A stretch of 64,000 bases of DNA from Oopsacas minuta (GCA_024704765.1 JAKMXF010000144.1:732184-796183), one strand, 5' to 3'. Positions 3,405 to 64,000 are shown, counted from the stretch's first letter. Made by a program: numbers and translations. Notes: generated by a model from the letters alone, not told the origin.

Positions 3405-4229
3405 ATGGCTAGTATATTACCAGGTAAGAAGATAGCACTAGTGACTGGGGGAGGAAGTGGTATAGGCAGAACTACTGCTGTCAAGTTCTCTATAAACGGA
3501 TACAATGTGATAGTAGCAGACATTGATAAGAAATCAGCTGATCAGACTGTAGAATTATTGAAAACAGAAGGATTAGCTGTTGAGGTTGATGTCACAATTG
3601 AATCTCAGGTGGAGGCAATGGTGAAAGCAGGTGTGGATAGGTTTGGTAGAATTGATGCCTGTTTTAATAATGCTGGGATTAACTGTAGCCATGCTGATAT
3701 ATCTAATGTATCTTATGAAGTTTTCTCAAAGGTCATGGATGTAAACGTAATAGGAACATTTCTATGCATGAAGCATGAACTAAAACAATTTCTACAACAA
3801 GAACCGTTAGAAATAGAGTTAGATAATAGTGTAGTAGATCCTAACGTTAGTGAGGCTCTACTAGCTAAATCGGCTCCTAAGCCAGTTAGAGGATATATTG
3901 TTAATATGAGTAGTATAGCTGGTGTTATGGGTGTTAGATTTATCTCTCCGTATGTAGCGTCTAAATGGGCAGTTGTGGGGTTGACAAAAGCCGCGGGACA
4001 AGAATACGCCTCTAGCGGTATTCTAATTAACTGCATTTGTCCAGCATTCACGGCCAGTAAGATGTCAGAACAGTTTAGTGATAGACTTAAAGGCAGTATA
4101 ATATCTAGGATGGGTGTAGGGAGGTTCTGTACAGCTGCTGAGTTAGCAGAGATAGTCATATGGTTGTGTTCTGGGAAATGTACTTTCATGGCTGGAGAGG
4201 TTATCACCATCAGTGGGAGTTCTGTATAG
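3405..4229 (+). CDS. Classical short-chain dehydrogenase/reductase, paralog 1
   Basis: TGGGSGIG, NNAG, catalytic S and YVASK; acidic residue after beta2 (VADID) suggests NAD(H) preference. Confidence 0.92.
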   Translation: MASILPGKKIALVTGGGSGIGRTTAVKFSINGYNVIVADIDKKSADQTVELLKTEGLAVEVDVTIESQVEAMVKAGVDRFGRIDACFNNAGINCSHADISNVSYEVFSKVMDVNVIGTFLCMKHELKQFLQQEPLEIELDNSVVDPNVSEALLAKSAPKPVRGYIVNMSSIAGVMGVRFISPYVASKWAVVGLTKAAGQEYASSGILINCICPAFTASKMSEQFSDRLKGSIISRMGVGRFCTAAELAEIVIWLCSGKCTFMAGEVITISGSSV

Positions 4230-36801: not shown

Positions 36802-38514
36802 ATGTATTCTATCCATAGTTTACATAATACAGTTAGACTTATCACTCGATTTACTCATCGATTTACTTCTATCAGATTTCAAAGCTCTGGGCCGAAACCT
36901 TTCTTCTATCAAGATGTACTTTCTCTTTCCACACCAGACACTACTCCGTATAGATTACTCACGCCAGATTTCGTGTCACAGGTGAGTGTGAATAACCGCG
37001 AGTTTTTGAATATTGACAGCTTAGCCCTCACCCTCCTAACCAAAGAAGCTATGACGGATATTGCTCACTTACTACGACCAGCGCATTTACAGCAACTAAG
37101 CAACATTCTAACAGATCCAGAAGCTACCAGTAATGATAAATTCGTAGCTCTAACTCTCTTAAGAAATGCTAATATAGCCTCAGCCATGGTACTACCAGGT
37201 TGTCAAGACACTGGTACGGCTATTGTAATAGGTAAGAAAGGTCACCAAGTGTTGACAGATGGTAGAGATGAAAAACATATAGCTATGGGTGTGTACAAAA
37301 CTTATACAGAAGGTAACCTCAGATACTCACAAGTATCTCCAACAGACATGTTCACGGAGGTAAACACCTGTACGAATCTCCCTGCACAGATAGAATTATA
37401 CGCTACTACAGGTAATGAGTACAGGTTCCTGTTCATTGCTAAAGGAGGAGGATCTGCAAATAAAACATTTCTCTATCAACAGACTAAAGCTATACTGAAT
37501 CGTAATAAATTACTAGCATTTATTGACAGTAACATCCGCACCCTTGGTACAGCAGCATGTCCTCCTTACCATCTAGCTATTGTTATAGGAGGACTTAGCT
37601 CTGAAATGACACTAAAAACTGTAAAGCTAGCTTCCACCAAATACCTTGATAATCTTCCTACCAGTGGGAATGAGCATGGACAAGCTTTTAGAGATTTGAA
37701 CCTGGAGCAGGAGGTATTACAGCTGACCAGAGAGACTGGTATCGGCGCTCAGTTCGGTGGTAAGTATTTCTGTCATGACGTCAGAGTTGTGAGGTTACCA
37801 AGACATGGTGCTTCTTGTCCGATTGGTATCGGCGTGTCATGTTCCGCAGACAGACAAGCACTTGGAAAGATTACCAAGGAGGGTGTGTTCTTAGAACAGC
37901 TAGAACGAGAGCCTTTCAAATACCTGCCAGAAGTTACACCTGATCAGCTGATAGAAGGAGAAGTTGTAAAGATAGATCTGAATCGTCCTATGAGAGATAT
38001 ATTGAGTACACTGTCAGGTTATCCTGTTAAAACCAGATTAAGTCTAACAGGTACACTGATAGTAGCTCGAGACATAGCTCATGCTAAACTGCAGGAGAGA
38101 ATATCTAATGGACAGGATCTACCGGAATATATTAAGAATCATCCAGTGTACTATGCCGGTCCAGCCAAGACCCCCGAGGGTATGGCATCCGGTTCATTTG
38201 GTCCCACAACAGCTGGAAGGATGGACTCGTATGTCGAAGAGTTCCAGGCACAAGGAGGAAGTATGATAATGCTCGCTAAAGGAAACAGAAGCAAACAGGT
38301 GACGCGTGCCTGTAAGAAGCATGGAGGATTCTATCTAGGGTCTATTGGAGGACCAGCTGCTATTCTAGCACGAGATAATATTAAGAAAATGGAATTATTG
38401 GAGTATCCTGAGTTAGGAATGGAAGCTGTGTGGAGGATTGAAGTAGCAGATTTCCCTGCATTCATTGTAGTAGATGACAAGGGAAATGATTTCTTTCAGG
38501 AATGGGCTGTTTAG
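36802..38514 (+). CDS. Class I (4Fe-4S) fumarate hydratase with putative mitochondrial presequence
   Basis: [50 protein letters not shown] and LAKGNRS are FumA/FumB-type motifs; Arg-rich, acid-free N-terminus. Confidence 0.93.
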
Positions 38515-48222: not shown

Positions 48223-49998
48223 AAGATAGAGATAGTGAAGAGAAAGCTTATGGGTATGTATTACTACCCTGGATCTTTATGTACCATTTATTGATTCTAT
48301 TTCTTATAGACTGAGAGAATGTGTAGAGATATACGCTAATGAGAATGATTGGGAACTCCCTGAAGGATTCAATCAGTTCCCTCAACAAATAAAGCAATCA
48401 CAATGTGCCTCTGCTTGGGCTGTATTAGCTCTGCAAGAGAATTCTAATCTAAATATCAACAAATAAGTTGACTTATTGTTTTGATAGAATAATTATTTGA
48501 ACAATAAAAAGCAAGAATTCATTTGAATGTTTGTAGATAATACGCGTGTTTGTATTTTATATATTTTGAATTCTTTTGGCTATTTTATTGATTTCAATTG
48601 TACTTTTTACTTAATATCGATTTCAGTTTCAGTTAATAATTATATATGTACGAGTTAAGAGTATGTATTTATACATATATAATGTAATATACTGTGGGTA
48701 CAACTGATCGTCAGGCACTGCGAGCGCAGTAGGCTAGTTTATGGTTAAAATGAAATTAAGTCAGGTTTTGGGTATTTTATCAACATTTTATTTATGGAGG
48801 AGACTAATTTCATTGTTTAACAGAGCATAGCATTATTCCAATCTTTTTATTGAATATCTTTGCAATCCTATTTTACTATAGTATTAGACTCATAGGTTAG
48901 ATATCTTAGAAACAATGCTGTACACATAGCCGTAGGAGACGGTACGGTTGGTTAGGCTTCAACCGTATCAATATTTGGGCTGCTAATAGAAATAGTATTA
49001 GTTAACAAGACTAACTTTGGTGGGTGCTATCTTGGTCAACCTCATCAACCTGATAATTGAATTCTGCTTCCTAAGGATACGTGGCGGAGCCCCTATTACT
49101 GAATATATTTTGTAGAATGTATTATTTATTATATAGCATTACAGTACACTAGCGCACTTCGCTTGCTCGCGCTACGCGGTTGCGAACACCTGAAATTTTG
49201 GATTTATCATATATAAGTTATCTAACCTGCGAGGTAAACTCTATATTATATATTATATTAGGATTGCAAAGATATTAAATAATATAGATTGAAGTGGATG
49301 AGTAATAGTATTATAAACCTGGATGGAAATTTGAACAGGTAAGGATAAGAAAAATTGTTACTATAGTGCTAGCTCTGTTAAACAATGAAATTTTGTATTC
49401 CACTCCTCCATACATAAAGTGTTGTTAAAATATACAAAAACCTGACATATCTTCATTTTATCCTTAAATGTAATAGTAGCCTAGCGAATGAACCGATTGG
49501 TCAGGAGAGGTGGTACGGCGCTCGCAGTGCCTGACGATCAATTGTACCCCCAAAATCTTATATAATATATAATATATAAACTTGTTAACTGAAACTGAAA
49601 TCGATATTAAAGTCAAAGTACAATTGAAATCAATAAAATAGCCAAAATAATTCAAAATATATAAAATACAAACACGCGTATTATCTACAAACATTCAAAT
49701 GAATTCTTGCTTTTTATTGTTCAAATAATTATTCTATCAAAACAATGAGTCAACTTATTTGTTGATATTTAGATTAGAATTCTCTTGCAGAGCTAATACA
49801 GCCCAAGCAGAGGCACATTGTGATTGCTGTATTTGTTGAGGGAACTGATTGAATCCTTCAGGGAGTTCCCAATCATTCTCATTAGCGTATATTTCTACAC
49901 ATTCTCTCAGTCTATAAGAAATAGAATCAATAAATGGTACATAAAGATCCAGGGTAGTAATACATACCCATAAGCTTTCTCTTCACTATCTCTATCTT
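48223..49998. repeat. Large inverted duplication; arms 48223-48726 and 49519-49998 contain the RNF213-like 3' end
   Basis: The arms are reverse complements with only scattered mismatches over the first ~400 bp. Weaker inner inverted homology at 48741-48895 versus 49258-49465. Confidence 0.92.
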
Positions 49999-52900: not shown

Positions 52901-55900
52901 CATTTTCTTCATTCACACTTGGACTTTTTCCCATCAAACCTGGGTGATGTGAGCAACGAACATGGAGAAAGATTTCACCAAGACATCTCTGTGATGAAAT
53001 CGCGGTATAGAGGTCGATTTAACCCAAACATGATGGGGGACTACTGCTGGTTTCTCCAGCGTGAAACTGACACTGAACATGCTCGAAAGAGCAAGTGTAT
53101 AAAGCACTTTTGAGAGGATACAATGTTATTTTTGTCTGGTTTAATCATCCTGAGTTGTGTTAAATTGTGCAAAATGATAATTTTGTTATTTTCACTAGCA
53201 ATCACTGTGTTTATTACATGTAATGTTTTGTTCTGCACAGCCAAAATTAGCCAAAATGACAATTACGGGTTGTTGTGTACATAAGTCATATCTCAAAAAC
53301 GTGACGTGTTAGAAAATATCTAAGGCCAGAATTGGATTCAGCATGGCCATATTAGTCTAGGTAAACTTGAAACGAGCAAGGAATAAAAAATAAGTTGTAA
53401 AATGTTGTCTAGTGTAATTCAAGATGATGCTAGAGAATTCGTATCATTGGTATTATATGGTACTTGGGTAGTAGGTTCACATTTCGAATATAGATCACCA
53501 TGTGTAGCATATGGGAAATCATTATTCACACCTAGAGAATTCATTTCAATGGTACAGCTTATACTGGGTAATCGAGTATGCTAATTCCAGATACAATAGA
53601 AGCCACTTAATCGGGACAAGTCGGGAGTGAGGTTTTGTCCGATCATCCGTACATCCTGTTAACCGATGTAAATATTTACTATTAGAAAACTTCTCATATA
53701 CAAATTGTTGTTCTCCTGTAAATTGTTCTATCAAATAAAATTTGATGTAGAAGTGTTAATTCCACAAGAGCACGAAATGTTCGCAATCCACGTAGCGGGA
53801 GCAACCATAGCGCTCGTATACTAAGAATCGCGCTGTATTGACCTGAGTAAGTGATTGTTAATAATCTTCTTCTCACTCAGCACCTGTTCCATCTGTCTCT
53901 GTACATCTGTGTTTAGAGAGCTGAGTATAGGTTGAATGAATTTCTTATCAAATTCTCTCTCCCATTGCTCTCTTAATTCACGCTGTGTTAAATCAGTAGT
54001 AATGCCACCTGTAATATAATCGAATAATAAATCACAAATATACTAAGACTGTTAAACCACTCACATGGCTCTTCTACTCTTTCCATTACAGATTTTATGA
54101 TCAGATGGATAAAGAAGATAACTTCCTCAAAGTTCTTTCCTGTCAGTCTAGTTAATGATCTAATGTCTCTCTCTAGATGTAGATAGAAGAAGTTGGGAAG
54201 ATCTCTAGGATCATTTAGTCCTCCTTTTATGAGAGAAGGAAGTAATGGACTCCTGTCTGTAGGATGTTTGGAACAAGATGACCAGATGAAGGAGATGTCC
54301 ATTAGGATACGAATAATCTTAACTGAAGCAGGAGATAGTGACCTATATAATTAGTATATGACCATGTAATCTAAAATATGTTAATTAAATCCATATTTCT
54401 AACCGCATCAACCCATTGAAGGCTAACTTGTACATACCTAGTGGTCTGAATAAGCCCCCCCCCCTTATTGATTTTTAGATTTTCTTCCAACCCCTCCCCG
54501 TTTTTTCGGACACCTAGAGTTGCTGGTTATAGTGAAGTGGTTAGAAAAATCCTAAATAAATTGTCAGTGATCCGGATTAATAACTTCTCTTAGAAATGTA
54601 TATATAATTTGTATTAAACTAAATTCGCTCGATATGCATAAACTCTCTATATTATGCGATTTATATGCAATATTTTTGATCCACTTTGGTTTACGTTTAG
54701 CATAAGCGTCCTTGACAGTATATATCCATGAAGTTGACAATACAAATGTGTTGTAAAGTATAAACAACCTTTCCCCACTTGGTACATCAATACTATCATT
54801 AGCGTTTGCTAACAAATATCCTAATTTTGTTTCGTCTTTGTTTATGTTAAGTATAACATTCTGAGATTCCAGTACTTCATTAATTCCTCCAATTTTACAT
54901 CCACAATCTGGACAAATAGACACCTCTGTAGGGTTGGTACACTAAATAAAATATTGTATGTAATGTTAAGGTTCAAACACAAAATTATGCAGTATATACT
55001 AAATTATAAAGTGATTACAATCATAGCATAATATCTATGTGCTGAACTAAGTTCTACTAAGTTGCATTCTATTGCAGCTTCTATAGCTATAAGGTGGTGT
55101 CCTAATGTAATAGAGGATATCCTTGCGGCGGTATAAATGCTAGTGGTCATACTGACACGACAATTCGTACACATAGATACATTTTAGGGTGGATAGACAT
55201 TTTATTGATGATTAATCATACTGTCGAAGATCCGAATCTCCAAGATGTGGGATGCTCCTTAAACTGGGCACCATTTATCCAAAAGGTTGAAATTTTATTT
55301 GATCTTTTTCAGATAATTCCCCTAGTGATAGAGTTGTCTTTGGTTGTAGTACTTGAAGTCCGTTTATTTGTAACAACAATCTGTTAAACATTATTCAAAT
55401 GCATCTTGATATTTAATATCACAGTAGAACGCATGGGACCCGGCACTTCGTGCCTCGAATTTAGCAGAGTATAAAATTGCATAATGAATTAACAAATATA
55501 TATTTTAACTATTTGTTTACTTTATATTCATAAAAACAACAAAGATTTACATATGAGAAACTTAAAATTCAGATTCAGCGTACATTGTTACCCCATTGTA
55601 GCCGTTAAGAGCAATTCCCTACCTATATTCTGAAATTTCAACTATTTTTTTACTTTATATTCATAAAAAACCACAAAAAATACTAATTCAAAAGTGTGAA
55701 AATCAGATTCTGCACATCCGATATATTTAGTCAAGTTTATTCAATTCTGTACACTTTCTTGGTAAACACGATAAATACAATATTATGCGACATCTGAGAA
55801 TTGAGAAATTCAAATTCACTACAACATTCCATAAATCCTTTCCTTGACAACGGGAAAATAAACACGCACCACAATATTTGAGGTTTGATAATATAGATTT

Positions 55901-58900
55901 GTATTTTAAGTAATCAGGATTGAATTTAACCATTGTACATTCGGGAAATTGCAAAAGATTCAATGTCAAACCATTCCAATAATTGTGAATTATACAAAAG
56001 AGTCCTAGCATCCACTTTTTATTGCAAGAATATTGAATATTATGCAGAACAACGATGAAATTTGTAAATTATTTGCAATTACAAAGGAGCGCGCTCCTTC
56101 AAAAAATGTAGCGAAGCTCCACCTTCCGCTCCTGAATCATAATTCGTGCGCGCAACAGGTCCCGCTACTTCAAAATAGGAGCGCGACCGGGAGCGACGTT
56201 CTTGGGGAGCGCTCCTTTAATGCTCTGATTAAGCGAAAACGTATCACGAATTTAAAAGTTGAGTGTAAATTGTATCTTACCCCTCCAATTAAGTAAGGAT
56301 GACCTTTAGGGCATCTATGCCATCCTCTAGATGCAGATAATACAGACATAACATCTTTAGCAGATATTAATGGATCATCCATCATAGTAGGAAATAATCT
56401 GTCCTGTAGAGTCTGAGGGTTCTCGTATATCAAAGCAATAGGTAGGAACAGCTTGTGATATTTCTTACAAGATAGCATAACAGCTACATGGTATATTAGT
56501 CTGATTAGGAATAATTCATGATTACTGGAAGTATCTGTGAGTTTAAGATTTGGTAGATTTCCATCTCCAAAGTTGTTTGTTGTTATCTGAATAGCTAAAT
56601 TGTATAGTACTGGGTTGATTTTCTTCAGGTCAGAATTCACAAAATTTGTGAGTGTAGCATATTTCTAAAACAATGTATCCGATAATATGTGACAGATAAT
56701 CGTTAAATTATAACATTTATTAATGGCGAATTTTACAGTTTTGCTGTCAAGGTTTGAAGTCAAATTACTAATTCCTCAATCAATACTGTGCAACAATAAA
56801 GATATACAAACTGGATGGAATTTAGAATAAATTTAACAACTATGAATTAAAGACTACTTACACTCTTTTCAAATATTTTATTATCTCCACTCTGCTGTAT
56901 CGAAGATAAAAGTTGTTGAAAGATAGAATAAATGAAGTATTCTGGTGCCTCAGATTTCTAAAGAGCAGTATTTTGATAGATTATCGCGAATATCTTTACT
57001 AGATCACTTCACGAAGAAGTAAGGCACCCGCACGACACTGATTGTCTGTCGTCGTTTAGGAGCATTCGGCAATTCATACGTAAACAGTATGCCACGACGA
57101 TAAGTTTGCACTGATTATGATGCCAGGAATGGAGGGTCTAGCACATAAGCTATAAGTAAGGGGACTGAAGTTTCAAACCTGAACAGTTTCCCATATAATT
57201 TGTGTGAATATTAATAGAAATTATATGAATATTGCTATCCCAAAAAGATTAAAGTACCAACTAATAATTATAACTAAAAGGCTCACAGTTTTAGGTTTGA
57301 ATAATTGCAAGATAGTATCATTTTTGTTTATCTTAATGGCTTGTTCAACTGCTTTAATCATTCTTGTATATTCTTCTCTGTATATCAAAAAATAATCAGG
57401 AATCTAAACAATAAAATGTAATGAAAGCATACTACCTCGGTATTTCTAACTATTACCACACAAATATATCTCAGTATAGATTATAGGCGTCGTAAACCAC
57501 CCGGATACCCAGAAATGTCCGAATGGCCCCGAGGACTATCTGGAACTCAGGGTGTTACCCTCGGACCTATCATATACTTCATACAATAGATATTTGGTGC
57601 TATAATATCAAACTTTCATTATACTCAATCTAAAATGTCCTCTAAAGTACAGAAATTCAGCTCTCCACACCTCAAAATGTTGTATTTGGTGTCTAATAAC
57701 GGCCCGAATTGCCAGGTTCACGATCCTGGCGAAAAGCCTCAGGGCGACCCAAAGTTGAGGATAATTTTACGAAGCCCAGGTATATATTAATGGAAGGAAT
57801 CAAACACATTATCCAAGTACCTGTTTTTACGAAAATGTATCATATTGTAGAATGATACAGTTTCGTAAAAGAATATTTCTGGGGTAATAGTCAGAGGTAA
57901 ACTATATTTTCTAACTGTAATAAGTACCTCCATATTGTCCGTTATACAATCTGGTAAAATCCAGGAAAATTTTGTATTTGAATTAAGAAAATTTATTGTA
58001 TCACTTCCCAATTGATGATATATATTCTTGAATAGGAGTAAACGGATATCTGCATGTCCTTTCAGCAAAGAGATTTCCTGGAAGCTAGTAACCAGTCCCA
58101 TTCTCTTTCCATGATCAGGTAGTTGTGTGTTTGTATTATTAAGGTTAAAACATTCAACAATCCATTTAGATACGGACACACAGATAAATCTTAGTGTAGC
58201 TATCTTCTCTAACAATTCATAAGATATTTCTAGCTGAACATTTCGCATACTAGTAATCTGGGATGTTAGAAAGTTGAGTTTATTTTCATATTTTTCACTG
58301 TTATATCGTTGATGAATAGAATCCTAAATATCAGTATATTACAAATAAAATTTGTTAGGTATGTAATAACTGTTTGAAATGTGATACGGGTGATAACATA
58401 TAATATCGAATATATTATAGAAAATAGTGACTCCAGGTGCGCCGGTACTCATCTACACCAAAAATCACCACATCCTATATTTAATATTTGAAAAATTACC
58501 TCAATTGAATGAGCTATCAATAGGTACAATTCTCTCTTCATTAAGTGATTTTTTAGATTACTCGCCACATTCGTCAAATAATTCGAAATGTATTCCTTAA
58601 ACACATCTTCCCTACAAGTAAACAAGATCAATATTAAGTATCCTGATAGCATATTGAATATAAACATCATTGTAGTTTTCTAATTGTAAATTATAGTATA
58701 TTGTTATAGTAGTTTAGTTATAATATGTATGAAGGCATCAAAATTGAGGGGAGTGATTCATGCACTATAGATCGAATATGTAAATATAGCAAAGATAGAA
58801 GGTTACCTATATCTAATCAGCAGCTGTAGTAAATAGGCTCCGAAAGCTAGAGAAGGCTCAACTCCATCTTTAGTAAAAATATTAATTTTTCCTTTGTCAT

Positions 58901-61900
58901 AACTCTTTTTACTTACACTCTTTTCATTGGGTATAACAAACTCCATAAGGAGATTACTGAGTTCATTATTTCCATCTTCTAACTCTATAGATTTGAATGT
59001 TAGATTAGTCAGGATACTGATGAAGAATCTTGTAGCTCTAATCTGGAATTCTTGCATGTCAAGTGCAGTTAATCTAGACCTGTACGTATAATATTTTAAA
59101 GTAAATAGTTGGTAGCAATGAATTGAATATTTTTAGCAATCCTTACCCTGAAACCTTTTTGATCTTCTTCACACTCTTAGATAAGATCTCAAGTATATGG
59201 TTAATTACTTTTACTGAAGAAAAATTTGGACTTTCTCCAAAGAGCTATTTAGTGAAATAAAAGAAAAGATGAATCCATAAATCTGAGATTTAGTTAGTCA
59301 CCAGAGGAAATTTTACAAAAAGAAGCACAAATTTGGTAACCTGAGCTGGGTGGTGCTAAGTTGCTTAATATGGATCAGAATGGGAGTATTTTCTGGCCTG
59401 CCTACGCGGCCCAAAAAGATTTTTGGCCAAATCCTTGACCTGTTTTGGATCACTAATTGATATTCAGAGCAAATTAAGCTCTAACTTTAATTTGGATTAT
59501 AGCAATATTGTGAATACTTTTGACGAAGTTAAACCGTAGTTTCTCCTGGAATAATATTGTTTTTGTGAGCTTCTTGCGAGGCCGAAATATTCATGCATGC
59601 TTTTTGAGGGCTGAATAATACAATCGCACGGCTGGCGCGGTTAGAAATTTCGGCCCGCTTGCAACTCTGGGACTGAGGAATAATGTGATAAACATTTGTA
59701 TTGATAATTTTCTAATTTAAACAATTGAATTAATCAACTTACCAAAAACAATTTGTGTATCTTGGATTCTATAACCTTGAACCAAACACCAAGAGCACAA
59801 TGAGTAATAAATAATTGAACTGCCACAATACGATTCCACCTAGACCTACATATAACACACACTATAATAATTCTATAAATGATGTAAAGTCAACAGACCG
59901 GCAGTGCAGCTAGCTGTTTTAAGAGGATTACAATTACCCCTACCCTGTCATAGGAAACTCATGTATAGTACAATTTTGAATTGGCCCAAAAGGCAAAAAC
60001 ATTGATTTGTATTGCATAGACGTAGGATGATAGTGTGAGCTGCCAGGACAATGGCTCAGGTCTTAATATAGATTTAGGCAACCCGCGGACCCTAAGTATG
60101 TATAGGTTAAATTTTGCACACCCAATGTATTAAAGTATATAACAAAGGGCTTTCCCTCTATTGATATTTAGGTCACAAACAGCTGTATTATATTTATTTA
60201 AAGTAGCTGTACCTCAGATCCAGTTTGTAATTTTCATTAGATGAATTTCTGTTTAAGCACAATCCCTTCTCCACTATACCATGCCACTGATTAACTTCAC
60301 TAACATATTGTTCAGCTAGCTCCCTACTAGCTGTACGCTCTTTCTTGTGTGAACACAGATTAATTATCAGTTCTAACAAAATTAGTTCGAGACAGTTCAT
60401 CTTGTTTCTGTTGTCAACATTTTTCACCAACTTTGAGAAAATTTGATTGAATTTGCCTGCCAAACTGTTTTCTAATTGAAAAGCTTGTTGCAATAAATCA
60501 AATAACTGCTTTGAGTCTTCATAAGCACAATGAATTCTTGGAATGGATATTTTATCGCTCAGCTTCGTACCTCCTTCATCATGTGAAGTACAGTTTAGCA
60601 GGACATTTTCATAGACCTATTATAATATAAAATCTAGTAAGAGAGTGTGGAAACTGCGTTATTATACAGGAACAAATTTCATAAAAATCTTTGATTAACA
60701 ATATTTGACAGATTAGTAATTTGGAAATTTTCAGATTAGGCTTTGTAGCTGGCGGATAATTTACTGTTGAATTTTGTGTATAAACATATCTCGTGTTGAA
60801 TTTCGTATTTGCTTTATCTCTTCATGTACAGATGTCCGATATATCGACCTGTTATGGGAAGCTCTGCGTCAAAGTGTTTGTGTTTCGTTAGTGTCAACAC
60901 ACAGCATACTTATGCTGTACATTTCTAGTAAGAACTTATATAACTCTAACGACATTAAAAGTGACCTACCTCATATTTATCATCATCAATTGGAAATAGA
61001 TTCATAAATATGAAATCTTTCAAATATAAATGCACTAACTGAAGGGATTCGTCCCTTTTCGGCATGTGCTTCATAAGTTTCTTCCCAATAGGAGTCTTAG
61101 CGAAAAGTTCCTCAAAACGAGTCCAAATGTCATCAGAAGCATCAGCTATAAGATATGCTTCATGTAAAAATAATTCATAATATACATTTCTGCTCTACCC
61201 GACCTGACTGGTTATTCTGACGATCAGACTCATTACAAGTACAAAAGCCATATTTTCAGATTTCAATTATCACGGTCAATCCAAATTGTTAGAGGTTACC
61301 AGACTGTTCGAGAGCTCTTACCTGTTTCAGCAATAGGAACACAGGTAATACAAATTTACGCTCCATTCTAAATTGTATTAAGGAATTATGCTAATATTAT
61401 ACATTCTATCTCGTTGGGATGCTACGACCTTTTGTATATGTTGAGTGGCATTACTAACATATTTCTCTAAAATGTGTATTAAATGGGATTTCCGTTTTTA
61501 TAGGTCAGACTGGTATCAAATAATTCTCATTCCCACAAATGTTCTAAAAATGCAGAATTCAATCTACTATTAAGTAAACTTTCTTATGAATAATATATGA
61601 TAAGATGTACTATTCTAACCTGATAAGATTTTTGTTTCTTTCAAAAGCTGAGATAAACACTGATTAATGAACCAAGAGAAAGGGAAGTGAGCTTTAAAGT
61701 ACTGTCCACCAGCTCCATCACTTAACACAGGAACTTTCCTTCTAGGTAGTAGTGTGTTTGGAGAGATTGTGTCTTTGTATTGTAACACAAGCAGACGCTC
61801 ATCTCTGAATATATCATGCCAGAGATTGAATAAACATTCTGGTACTTCTTCATTATAGAGAGCTAGCTCTAGATTTCCATTTCTATCTATACAAGCAATC

Positions 61901-62782
61901 AACTCTGCTACTAGAGGAGTAATAGTACTGTTAATACGGAGATTTACAGCTTTACGGAATGTTCCAGATGATTGTATGTCTTCTACACAATTAGCTGTCT
62001 GTAGTAACCAGTCTGTATTGGTATCAATTGAAGAATTAGATTGATCTCTCAACAGTATAGTCAATCTTTGACATAAAGTTCGATGAAGTCAACTATAAAT
62101 GAGGGTAGAGAATGTAGTTATATAAGAATGAGGTTTAAAAAATTTATATTATTAAATCTCAATTGTTGTCTGTTAGTCTGTTTGTTTGGCCGTTGTCAAG
62201 AAATGCTATTTTGAAATTGATGCATAACTATGTATTTATCGTGTTTATCAAGGAAGTAAATAGAATTCAATAAAACTTCACTAAATATATCGAACATGCT
62301 GAATCCGATTTTCACATTTTTGGATTAATCATATGTAAATTTATTGTTGTTTTTATGAATATAAAGTGAACAAATTAGCAAAATCTCAAAATTTAGGGGA
62401 GATACTTACCCTCAACGGCTAGAAAGGGGGTTGATCTTACAAAATATTGTAATAACACATATGCCATATACTGATATTAGTGAATTACATTGTTCTAAAT
62501 ATATCTATATCATAATACTCAAAGGGGCGGTCAATTTAGAGAATAATGGATACCCCGAGGCGCATTGCGCCGAATTCATCGCGAAGCGACGAGCCAAAGC
62601 TTATCTTATTAAAAATGAAACGGGACCTAACATTTGACAATCTCATACTTACAACTGTACTTGTTTGTAGTTAAGAGAAGATCCAAATGTTGAATTCGAT
62701 CAATAATACGATCATCACTGCAATGATCATCCTCTAATCTTGAAACTGTTAACTGAATACAATTTTTCAATCTTTCTTTTAT
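49755..62782 (-). CDS. RNF213: RNF213 (mysterin)-like giant E3, 3' part (E3 module, RZ finger, CTD); further 5' exons upstream or outside the window
   Basis: Phase-consistent GT-AG exons: 62782-62653, 62092-61620 (1-nt gap at 62067-62069), 61145-60970, 60616-60213, 59839-59743, 59244-59147, 59079-58807, 58611-58500, 58257-57928, 57403-57287, 56957-56862, 56664-56281, 54941-54769, then about nine more to the stop at 49757-49755. Peptides GTFRKAV..IDRNGNLEL, FPFSW, YLKDF, RCPKGH..CPDC, LPDIIQLQR, YLLP..GRG, FLSSAGGDP, QFPQQI..W match RNF213 as I recall it. Confidence 0.88.
52209..53414 (+). mobile_element. Internally deleted Chapaev3-like transposon in an RNF213 intron
   Basis: CACTGGGCAACA / TGTTGTCTAGTG termini; TAA duplicated on both sides; subterminal inverted tacctagactaa..atgctga..cca; transposase remnant GIFVGPQIR..HFLHSHLDFFPSNLGDVSNEHGERFHQD..MMGDYCW. 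Confidence 0.82.
55425..55790 (-). mobile_element. Helitron-like element in an RNF213 intron
   Basis: The minus strand carries gctgaatctgaatttt..catatgtaaat..ttgtttttatgaatataaagtaaacaaat (shared with 62300-62380) and a GCACGAAGTGC hairpin near the end. Confidence 0.5.
62143..62603 (+). mobile_element. Near-complete non-autonomous Helitron-like element in an RNF213 intron
   Basis: tatattattaaatc start, gtctgtt microsatellite, CGCGAAGCG hairpin about 12 nt before the end; homologous to 46915 and 25031. Confidence 0.6.
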
Positions 62783-63129
62783 CTAAGAATTAGAGTAATT
62801 GTAAACCAAAAACCTAAGTTTGCCAAATAATTATTTGTTCAGAACTCTTCTTCAGAATATAGAATGTCTCAGTAATGTTAATTATCTACATTATTTAAAA
62901 GTTAATTATGTGGATTATGTGTGTGTTTGTTTGTCCACTTTGTATTACTATGATAGAGTAGGGGTAAAGCTACGAGCCAAAGTTCATTGGATTGAAAATG
63001 CAGATAAAGAAATATTTCGCCGTAATTAATACACCTTATCTTACCGTATTTAGAAATGGAATACGGCACACAACAAATAGTTTCAAAATGGTGGCCATAT
63101 TGAACAGAGTTCATGCCGGCATATAATTG

Positions 63130-63470
63130 ACGAATACGCTTCGCTTGCTTGCGCTGCGCAGCTTGCAAATACTTTGCATTTGCACTGGCCCCGGCACTAC
63201 GAACCTCGAATTACTATCGTGTAACAAAATCCTAATTTATGAAATAAATATCCAACAAGTATGAAACTTGAAAAATCAGCGTACTTGATTACTCACGTAT
63301 AACCGTTGAGAGCAAGTCTCTACGATTATTTCAAGATTTCAATTATTTGTTTACTACATGAATATTCATAAAAACAATATTAGGCAAATGATAAACTTTA
63401 AAATGCGAAACTCGTGCTACGCTAAATCGTGTTTTTGTTGAGCTTGACACTTCGTGCCTCGAATTATTTC
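63130..63470 (-). mobile_element. Clustered Helitron-like 3' end fragments
   Basis: cttcgcttgc, cggcactacgaacctcgaatt and cacttcgtgcctcgaatt motifs, as at 31560 and 55441. Confidence 0.4.
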
Positions 63471-63912: not shown

Positions 63913-64000
63913 GCCTAGATTAGCCTCCCCACCCAGTTTAACCCCGGGTATAGTCTGGGCTAGCCTAGATTAACCCCCAGGTATAAACTGGGCTAGGCCA
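63913..64000. repeat. Start of a ~32-bp tandem repeat at the window edge
   Basis: aaccccgggtatagtctgggctagcctagatt / aacccccaggtataaactgggctag. Confidence 0.4.

What the first reader, a model, noticed from the sequence alone, without database searches (positions are those of the whole stretch)
59040..59244. RNF213-like E3 with no RING domain
Seen: exon 59244-59147 (LFGESPNFSSVKVINHILEILSKSVKKIKKVSG) splices in phase across a 67-nt intron (59146-59080) into SRLTALDMQEFQIRATRFFISILTNLTFK, and no Cys/His cluster is encoded there. From memory of human RNF213, the RING sits exactly between the equivalent segments (..ETASKTLSRFG [RING] ..KHARFRQMCNSFFVDLVSTICFKD). The intron is too short to hide a RING exon. 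Established: RNF213 can ubiquitylate LPS independently of its RING. Inference: this is a naturally RING-less, RZ-only mysterin, so the RING was either lost here or acquired later in other lineages.
Basis: partly seen in the sequence, partly recalled or inferred. Interest (0 to 1): 0.8.

Follow-up and report, generated by a model that had tools for sequence, protein, structure and literature searches.

The report
Sponge RNF213 gene lacking its RING exon
This is the 3' part of an expressed sponge gene of the RNF213 (mysterin) family that has no RING domain because the small exon encoding it was deleted; the same loss recurs in other animals and already sits unremarked in public protein sets, so it is real but only moderately new.

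Summary
On the minus strand, exon 59244-59147 joins exon 59079-58807 across a 67-nt GT-AG intron. Spliced with their neighbours they give one open frame of more than 500 residues, and no frame of the window encodes a RING.

The flanking exons align with RNF213 of many animals. In RING-bearing proteins the RING lies exactly at this junction. Seven paralogous loci from ENA assemblies have the same RING-less junction, so this is a family trait. Their upstream giant exons are about 40% identical to the RNF213 AAA core.

- A sister subfamily in one of the same assemblies keeps a separate 192-nt RING exon between the equivalent exons. It has the same intron phase, so its deletion keeps the reading frame.
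- RING-bearing RNF213 also exists in homoscleromorph sponges, cnidarians and bilaterians.
- RING-less paralogues recur in demosponges, cnidarians and amphioxus.

Caveats:
- The AAA exon lies outside the window.
- The junction itself is inferred from the length of one RNA-like contig.
- The RZ finger has Glu where the human enzyme has its general-base His.

The scan reached the same reading before on another paralogue of this genome (s1-248619).

The parts
60213..60616 (-). Exon 'E140', part of the E3-back domain. It ends with 2 nt of a split Arg codon, followed by the donor GTACAG.
   Evidence: 51-53% identical to the equivalent exon in L001-L007 (alignment A2). Aligns with the region upstream of the RING in RNF213 proteins.
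59743..59845 (-). It carries the conserved E3-back motif W.R..AV.LFIEH. It is not a RING relic.
   Evidence: 58-84% identical in the paralogues. The motif is also present upstream of the RING in RING-bearing RNF213. No Pfam match.
59147..59244 (-). It is equivalent to the helix just before the RING insertion, the penultimate helix of E3-back.
   Evidence: Aligns with ..ALGEE.D.KS....E.FL..C.. of hemichordate, cnidarian and bivalve RNF213.
59080..59146 (-). 67-nt GT-AG intron that splits a Gly codon after its second base. It lies at the place where other RNF213 genes carry the RING.
   Evidence: Donor and acceptor are conserved in seven paralogues. L008 has two introns of the same phase flanking a 192-nt RING exon at this place.
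58807..59079 (-).
   Evidence: Profile A1 matches only RNF213 chains in the PDB, end to end (7oik_A 4002-4091). It matches RNF213 proteins of eight animals at E 4e-7 to 1e-2. An X4 contig covers 59077-58806.
58500..58611 (-). 112-nt exon (REDVFKEYISNYLTNV...AHSIE).
   Evidence: Its length equals the unlisted 112 letters between two listed pieces of the X4 contig.
57928..58323 (-). E3-shell exon ('E178'). The donor is GAG|GTACTT.
   Evidence: An X4 contig covers 58322-58036. 15 paralogous exon products at 44-56% identity.
56281..56322 (-). First half of the RZ finger (WHRCPKGHPYLIGG). The exon ends here, followed by the donor GTAAGA.
   Evidence: Pfam PF20173, profile positions 8-23. Coordinates.
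54855..54941 (-). Second half of the RZ finger (CTNPTEVSICPDCGCKIGGINE...). It keeps the nucleophile Cys and two Zn-binding Cys. The Glu codon 54878-54876 stands at the position of the human general base H4537.
   Evidence: Pfam PF20173, 27.3 bits against a cut-off of 27. Weak match to mouse RNF213 chain 6tay_A 3939-3988. Residue roles from PMC11549300. Coordinates.

Best explanation
The window holds the E3-module and C-terminal exons of one member of a large RNF213 (mysterin) expansion in a sponge.

In RNF213 the RING is a small domain inserted between the last two helices of the E3-back domain. In this gene lineage the RING was encoded by its own exon. That exon begins with one base and ends with two bases of split codons, so it is 'symmetric'. 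It was deleted together with one flanking intron. The two neighbouring exons are now separated by a single short intron of the same phase, and the reading frame is intact.

The product is therefore a natural equivalent of the engineered RING-deletion mutant of mammalian RNF213. Any ubiquitin-ligase activity would have to come from the retained RZ finger and E3 scaffold, presumably driven by the dynein-like AAA core encoded upstream.

Shown: the exon structure, the homology, the absence of a RING, the presence of a RING exon in a sister subfamily, and the recurrence of RING-less forms. Inferred: the direction of change (loss), the deletion mechanism, and any enzymatic activity.
For: 1. Structure. 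GT-AG sites and an open spliced frame, conserved in seven paralogous loci from five ENA assemblies.

2. Family.
- The paralogues' giant upstream ORF matches RNF213 of cnidarians, echinoderms, molluscs and vertebrates at 38-48% identity with E = 0.
- The profile of exon 59079-58807 hits only RNF213 in the PDB, end to end, and hits RNF213 proteins at E down to 4e-7.
- A MAFFT alignment of the spliced window protein runs collinear with RNF213 through E3-back and E3-shell.

3. RING position.
- In RING-bearing proteins the last RING Cys lies about 16 residues before the equivalent of exon 59079-58807.

4. Absence. No RING by Pfam, by an RNF213-RING HMM or by pattern in any frame of the window and L001-L007. 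As a positive control, the HMM hits 98 of 263 fetched proteins.

5. Loss.
- Locus L008 comes from the same assembly as L002, L003 and L006.
- Its 192-nt exon carries a full C3HC4 (RNF213-RING HMM E 2.9e-5; Pfam zf-C3HC4_3 25.5 bits).
- That exon lies between the equivalents of the two reader exons, with the same phases and an open conceptual splice.
- L009 has half a RING and L010 has none.
- The two subfamilies form one side of a branch with SH-aLRT 100.
- RING-bearing RNF213 occurs in Oscarella, Corticium, Stylophora, Oculina and Montipora at the same site.

6. Recurrence. The RING state needs at least 6 changes on the tree. Sister pairs with and without a RING exist in Stylophora (P0154/P0184) and Branchiostoma (P0160/P0177).

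7. Expression. Contigs of run X4 join exons at the predicted sites.

8. Function of a RING-less enzyme. The mammalian RING deletion keeps auto-ubiquitylation and bacterial ubiquitylation, which depend on the RZ finger (PMC7311170; PMC11549300).
Against: - The tree is unrooted and no non-animal outgroup was found. 'Loss' rests on the two sponge subfamilies being a true clade and on the RING insertion being too specific to arise twice.
- The assemblies that hold L001-L010 are not shown to be the same species as the window. No exon product more than 56% identical to the window's was found.
- The AAA exon is not in the window, so this copy could be truncated at its 5' end.
- The junction 59147|59079 was not printed by read laying. 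Only the contig's length fits.
- The RZ finger has Glu at the general-base position, so ligase activity is uncertain.
- The RING-less proteins of other animals are gene models and could in part be exon-skipping artefacts.
Confidence: 0.8

Rival explanations
1. Primitive absence. This sponge lineage never had the RING, and the RING was inserted later in the line leading to other animals.
For: All sampled demosponge proteins and all seven subfamily-A loci lack it. The tree has no outgroup. An intron sits exactly at the insertion site, which would also suit an exon gain.
Against: The sister subfamily from one of the same assemblies has a RING exon at the same site and phase. Homoscleromorph sponges and cnidarians have the RING at the same place. 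A second, independent insertion of a similar RING at the same codon phase is very unlikely. RING loss is seen repeatedly between close paralogues.
Confidence: 0.07
2. The RING is present but was missed. It could be encoded by an alternative or distant exon, or lost through an assembly error.
For: The junction read itself was not displayed. The upstream 498-nt intron 59245-59742 and other introns could in principle hold small exons.
Against: - No frame of the whole 64-kb window gives an RNF213-RING HMM or C3HC4 pattern match within the gene.
- DNA-type contigs of three runs (X1-X3) cover 57700-60385 collinearly, with only single-base and 1-2-nt differences.
- Seven independent loci show the same junction.
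- The 772-nt RNA-like contig has exactly the length of the RING-less splice form.
Confidence: 0.03
3. The window copy is a decaying or 5'-truncated paralogue, with no working ligase, in a gene family undergoing birth-and-death turnover. Its RING-less state would then have no functional meaning.
For: - No AAA exon lies within the window.
- A very high-copy repeat lies in the upstream intron at 62000-62750.
- The general-base His of the RZ finger is Glu.
- An inverted duplicate of the 3' end lies just downstream.
Against: The spliced frame is open over more than 500 residues, with all splice sites intact. The exons are covered by spliced RNA-like contigs. The Zn ligands and the nucleophile Cys are kept. 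The His position also varies (Y/H/R) in paralogues with intact giant ORFs and in a RING-bearing coral protein. Introns of several kb occur in the paralogues.
Confidence: 0.12

Closest known systems
Mammalian RNF213 / mysterin (mouse 6TAX, 6TAY, 7OIK; human 8S24)
   Same: E3-back, E3-shell and RZ-finger segments are homologous and collinear. The paralogues have the dynein-like AAA core.
   Different: There is no RING between the last two E3-back helices. The RZ general base His is replaced by Glu. In the paralogues most of the protein is one giant exon. The N-arm and AAA core of this copy were not seen.
Engineered RING-deletion RNF213 (Ahel et al. 2020; Otten et al. 2021, as cited in PMC11549300)
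   Same: The same domain is missing at the same place. The mutant remains active in auto-ubiquitylation and in ubiquitylating Salmonella and Listeria through the RZ finger.
   Different: This one is natural, old and fixed in a whole paralogue family. Its activity is untested.
RING-less 'RNF213-like' proteins in public proteomes (Amphimedon, Halichondria, Dysidea, Ephydatia; Stylophora, Acropora, Montipora, Porites, Oculina, Actinostola; one Branchiostoma paralogue)
   Same: The same block is absent between the same flanking segments, and most keep the RZ finger.
   Different: They are separate losses on the gene tree. They are known only as gene models, and no paper in the searched library discusses them.
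Sister RNF213 subfamily from the ENA assembly that also holds L002, L003 and L006 (loci L008, L009, L010)
   Same: The same exon order and intron phases, and a giant upstream exon.
   Different: L008 keeps a 192-nt RING exon, L009 keeps half of the Zn ligands, and no RING was found in L010.
ZNFX1
   Same: It shares the RZ finger (Pfam PF20173; PMC11549300).
   Different: ZNFX1 is an SF1 helicase without the RNF213 E3-back and E3-shell scaffold or the six-AAA core. The window exons match RNF213, not ZNFX1.

Membership tests
RNF213 / mysterin | Dynein-like core of six AAA units | tested here: inconclusive
   No part of the paralogues' giant AAA exon is inside the window (tblastn blank), so it would lie beyond 64000. 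In the paralogues it is present: E = 0 and 38-48% identity to RNF213 of many animals, with Pfam AAA_5 and AAA_7.
RNF213 / mysterin | E3-back and E3-shell scaffold specific to RNF213 | tested here: met
   The profile of exon 59079-58807 hits only RNF213 chains in the PDB (E 0.2, full length). It hits RNF213 proteins at E 4e-7 to 1e-2 in the fetched set. The alignment is collinear over about 420 residues.
RNF213 / mysterin | RZ finger: Zn ligands C-x3-H...C-x2-C plus a nucleophile Cys and a general-base His | tested here: inconclusive
   Pfam PF20173 scores 27.3 bits against a cut-off of 27 for the second half, and the first half lies on the preceding exon. The Zn ligands and the nucleophile Cys are present with human spacing, but the H4537 equivalent is Glu.
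RNF213 / mysterin | C3HC4 RING inserted between the last two helices of E3-back | tested here: not met
   No RING by Pfam, by the RNF213-RING HMM or by pattern in any frame. The 67-nt intron is too short. The feature gives the family its name but is dispensable for its core activity.
RING-type E3 ligases | Cross-brace C3HC4 or C3H2C3 zinc-binding domain | tested here: not met
ZNFX1-type RZ proteins | SF1 helicase core upstream of the RZ finger | tested here: not met
   The exons upstream of the RZ finger align with the RNF213 E3 module. The paralogues carry AAA_5 and AAA_7, not a helicase.

The most novel reading that the evidence does not exclude
The RING of RNF213 is a symmetric cassette exon that animals have deleted again and again when the gene expanded into lineage-specific, probably immune, paralogue arrays. 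The expanded copies would work without any RING function. Some of them, this one included, have also replaced the RZ general-base His by Glu, Tyr or Arg. They may therefore use a different transfer chemistry, or act as non-catalytic partners or decoys of the catalytic copies.
Probability: 0.25. Interest if true: 0.55.

Novelty: new variant of a known kind. Interest (0 to 1): 0.4.

Why it matters
No physiological substrate is known for the RING of RNF213, although the protein is named after it (PMC11549300). Repeated natural deletion of the RING with retention of the RZ finger, from sponges to amphioxus, is independent evolutionary evidence on two points. The RZ finger and E3 scaffold would be the conserved core of the enzyme. 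The RING would be an accessory that expanded paralogues can do without. This gives specialists natural RING-plus and RING-minus sister pairs for asking what the RING does. It does not change the picture of how RNF213 works. The RING-less proteins are already in public databases, and the scan has already reported the same thing for another paralogue.

Tried and rejected
1. Degenerate-RING idea. This is rejected. 'CVIC' is intronic, and the W.R..AV.LFIEH motif is also present upstream of the RING in RING-bearing RNF213.

2. Single-sequence searches of the PDB with exons 58809-59078 and 57790-58323 found no RNF213. The profile of exon 60616-60213 found none either. Only the profile of exon 59079-58807 did.

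3. The exhaustive representative search with the 178-residue exon gave only single-exon fragments and two spurious repeat proteins.

4. The ESM Atlas look-up of exon 62088-61618 was uninformative; all scores were below 0.9.

5. No run is on record as RNA. Laying the four runs showed that one of them (X4) behaves like RNA, but the decisive piece was not printed.

6. The Cys-rich stretch 63196-63086 is not a RING and has no Pfam hit.

7. The 2-kb intron of L002 and the 5.7-kb intron of L004 hold no RING relic detectable by HMM.

8. Four literature searches found no paper on natural RING-less RNF213 or on sponge RNF213. The library is incomplete, so this is weak evidence of novelty.

9. No structure was predicted.

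10. The organism was not verified here.

Full report
**What is in the sequence**

The window is AT-rich eukaryotic DNA, about 35% G+C. On the minus strand, an AG acceptor at 59246-59245 precedes exon 59244-59147, which encodes LFGESPNFSSVKVINHILEILSKSVKKIKKVSG. A GT donor follows at 59146, and a 67-nt intron ends in AG at 59080. Exon 59079-58807 continues in the same phase with SRLTALDMQEFQIRATRFFISILTNLTFK and ends at a GT donor.

I extended the model on both sides:
- Downstream: a 112-nt exon 58611-58500, and exon 58323-57928.

Joined at these GT-AG sites, the six exons give one open frame of more than 500 residues. Further downstream an RZ-type zinc finger is split over two exons, 56322-56281 and 54941 onward (Pfam PF20173).

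**Expression**

No public run holding this stretch is recorded as RNA. When the four holders were laid on 57700-63300, three gave collinear genomic contigs. The fourth, X4, covers mainly the exons, with deep coverage only on some of them and none in two intron-only bins. It has contigs that skip introns at the predicted sites:
- One contig joins 60614 to 60968.
- One 772-nt contig in the sense of the gene lists 59077-58806 (272 nt) and 58322-58036 (287 nt), with 112 unlisted letters between them. That is exactly the 112-nt exon.
- The first 101 letters of that contig were not listed. Their number equals 1 + 98 + 2, as expected if exon 59244-59147 is spliced directly onto 59079.

The gene is therefore very probably transcribed and spliced as modelled. 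The junction in question is supported by length only, not by a printed alignment.

**Family**

Single exons did not find RNF213 in the PDB, apart from a weak match of the RZ exon (E 0.05). Protein searches with the largest exon found only single-exon products at 44-56% identity on many contigs of ENA assemblies.

Fetching seven of these places (L001-L007, from five assemblies) showed paralogous genes with the same exon order. In five of the seven, a single giant ORF of 3259-3581 residues with faint AAA_5/AAA_7 matches lies upstream. The last 1959 residues of one such ORF match proteins named RNF213 or rnf213-alpha-like from corals, crinoids, hemichordates, bivalves, fishes and reptiles. These matches have E = 0 and 38-48% identity.

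The paralogues are RNF213 homologues beyond doubt. The window gene shares their E3-module and C-terminal exons at 37-88% identity. No part of the giant exon lies inside the window, so it would be beyond position 64000.

**Where the RING belongs**

A profile of exon 59079-58807 and its paralogues (A1) matches only RNF213 chains in the PDB. The match covers the profile's whole length, at 7oik_A 4002-4091: RKAIEKHAQFRHMCNSFFVDLVSTMCFKD....

Against the fetched proteins, the profile hits RNF213 of eight animals at E 4e-7 to 1e-2. In every RING-bearing protein the last RING cysteine lies about 16 residues before the start of this segment.

A MAFFT alignment of the spliced window protein with nine RNF213 proteins is collinear through E3-back and E3-shell. 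It shows a block of roughly 60-70 columns that holds the RING in Glandiceps, two fishes and two bivalves. The block is empty in the window protein, three cnidarian proteins and Ephydatia.

[quoted passage not shown] That fits.

**No RING anywhere in the gene**

- Pfam finds no RING in any of the exons.
- An HMM built from 41 RNF213 RINGs taken at the homologous place recognises 98 of the 263 fetched proteins.
- That HMM finds nothing within the gene in any of the six frames of the window, and nothing between the relevant exons of L001-L007.
- A C3HC4 pattern has no match at all.
- My own idea that the unresolved exon 59845-59743 was a RING that had lost its ligands is rejected. Its motif W.R..AV.LFIEH is also present upstream of the RING in RING-bearing proteins.

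**Lost or never present?**

A search with the Ephydatia protein returned full-length RNF213 from many phyla.

The RNF213-RING HMM finds a RING at the homologous place in:
- the homoscleromorph sponges Oscarella and Corticium;
- the corals Stylophora, Oculina and Montipora;
- nearly all sampled bilaterian proteins (one Branchiostoma paralogue is the exception).

It finds none anywhere in:
- four full-length demosponge proteins (Amphimedon twice, Halichondria, Dysidea);
- nine cnidarian paralogues;
- one Branchiostoma paralogue.

A maximum-likelihood tree of the AAA core (46 rows, quick search) follows the phyla, so the expansions are lineage-specific. With the states corrected, the RING needs at least six changes on it. 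Sister pairs with and without the RING occur in Stylophora and Branchiostoma.

The decisive piece is a second group of giant ORFs. It forms one side of a branch with the RING-less sponge group (SH-aLRT 100).
- Its locus L008 comes from the same assembly as L002, L003 and L006.
- The RNF213-RING HMM scores that exon at E 2.9e-5. Pfam zf-C3HC4_3 scores it at 25.5 bits, E 1e-5.
- The exon begins with one base and ends with two bases of split codons. These are the same phases as the single intron of the window gene, and the conceptual splice is open.
- A second locus of that group, L009, retains only six of the eight ligand positions in recognisable form, with Gln at the His position and no C7/C8. 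In a third, L010, I found no RING.

The simplest reading is that the RING exon and one flanking intron were deleted in the ancestor of the window's subfamily. Because the exon is symmetric, the frame stayed intact and a short intron remained. That intron is 53-67 nt in the window gene and five of the seven paralogues. The RING is being lost piecemeal in the sister subfamily as well.

**How it probably works**

In mammals, deletion of the RING leaves auto-ubiquitylation and ubiquitylation of Salmonella and Listeria intact. Both depend on the RZ finger, in which C4505, H4509, C4525 and C4528 bind zinc. C4516 and H4537 are proposed as nucleophile and general base (PMC7311170; PMC11549300).

The window gene keeps the four zinc ligands and the nucleophile cysteine with the human spacing. 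It has Glu at the H4537 position (codon 54878-54876). The paralogues have Tyr, His or Arg there, and a RING-bearing coral protein has Tyr.

I therefore infer an RZ-dependent ligase driven by an AAA core. Its catalytic competence is untested, and for this copy it is uncertain.

**Limits**

- The tree has no outgroup.
- The species of the ENA assemblies and of the window were not identified here.
- The RING-less proteins of other animals are gene models.
- The AAA part of this copy was not seen.
- The junction read was not displayed.

**Novelty**

Four full-text searches found no paper on natural RING-less RNF213 or on sponge RNF213. However, the RING-less proteins are in public databases under RNF213 names. 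An earlier follow-up of this scan reached the same conclusion on another paralogue of this genome (s1-248619).

This is a natural domain-loss variant of a known family. It is of moderate interest as evolutionary support for the view that the RZ finger, not the RING, is the core of the enzyme.

Noticed in passing
window 54876-54878 (-), and L001-L007 RZ exons: The residue equivalent to the human RZ general base H4537 is Glu in the window gene. It is Tyr, His or Arg in the sponge paralogues and Tyr in a RING-bearing Stylophora protein. The Zn ligands and the nucleophile Cys are kept.
   Followed up: partly
window 48239-48463 (+) and 49758-49982 (-): Two nearly identical 75-residue open frames (RESLWVCITTLDLYVPFIDSISYRLRECVEIYANENDWELPEGFNQFPQQI.QSQCASAW) lie in inverted orientation. 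One is the last coding part of the RNF213-like gene, so its 3' end is duplicated head to head just downstream.
   Followed up: no
window 62000-62750: A stretch inside the upstream intron has contig word depths up to about 5e5 in the DNA runs, with many rearranged joints. It is a very high-copy repeat or satellite.
   Followed up: no
L007 15503-20534: A second giant RNF213-type ORF (3516 residues in the collection) starts about 1 kb after the end of the first paralogue, so the genes stand in tandem arrays.
   Followed up: no
L009 23744-23920; L010 27075-27800: In the sister subfamily, L009 has a half-decayed RING exon. C1, C2, C3, C5 and C6 are kept, His is replaced by Gln, and there is no C7 or C8. 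L010 has no detectable RING between the flanking exons.
   Followed up: partly
L008 22400-24320; L002 7299-9366; L004 890-6640: The introns next to the RING site are enlarged to 2-6 kb in some paralogues. In L008 the intron carries long open frames that look like a transposon insertion. L002 and L004 were not examined for ORFs.
   Followed up: no
P0154/P0184 (Stylophora, same contig) and P0160/P0177 (Branchiostoma): Closely related protein pairs differ by presence or absence of the RING, with near-identical flanks. They are either recent exon losses in tandem duplicates or exon-skipped gene models.
   Followed up: partly
window 37399-37509 (-): A weak match of the RNF213-RING HMM (E 0.01, 15 bits) lies in an open stretch far from the gene, opposite a 571-residue plus-strand ORF. 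It is probably chance.
   Followed up: no
P0072, P0073, P0079, P0115 (ENA), P0148 (Amphimedon), P0202 (Corticium): P0072, P0073, P0079, P0115 and P0202 carry a precomputed UBA-domain hit (PF00627) in addition to the AAA core. For P0148 only its UniRef name says 'UBA domain'.
   Followed up: no
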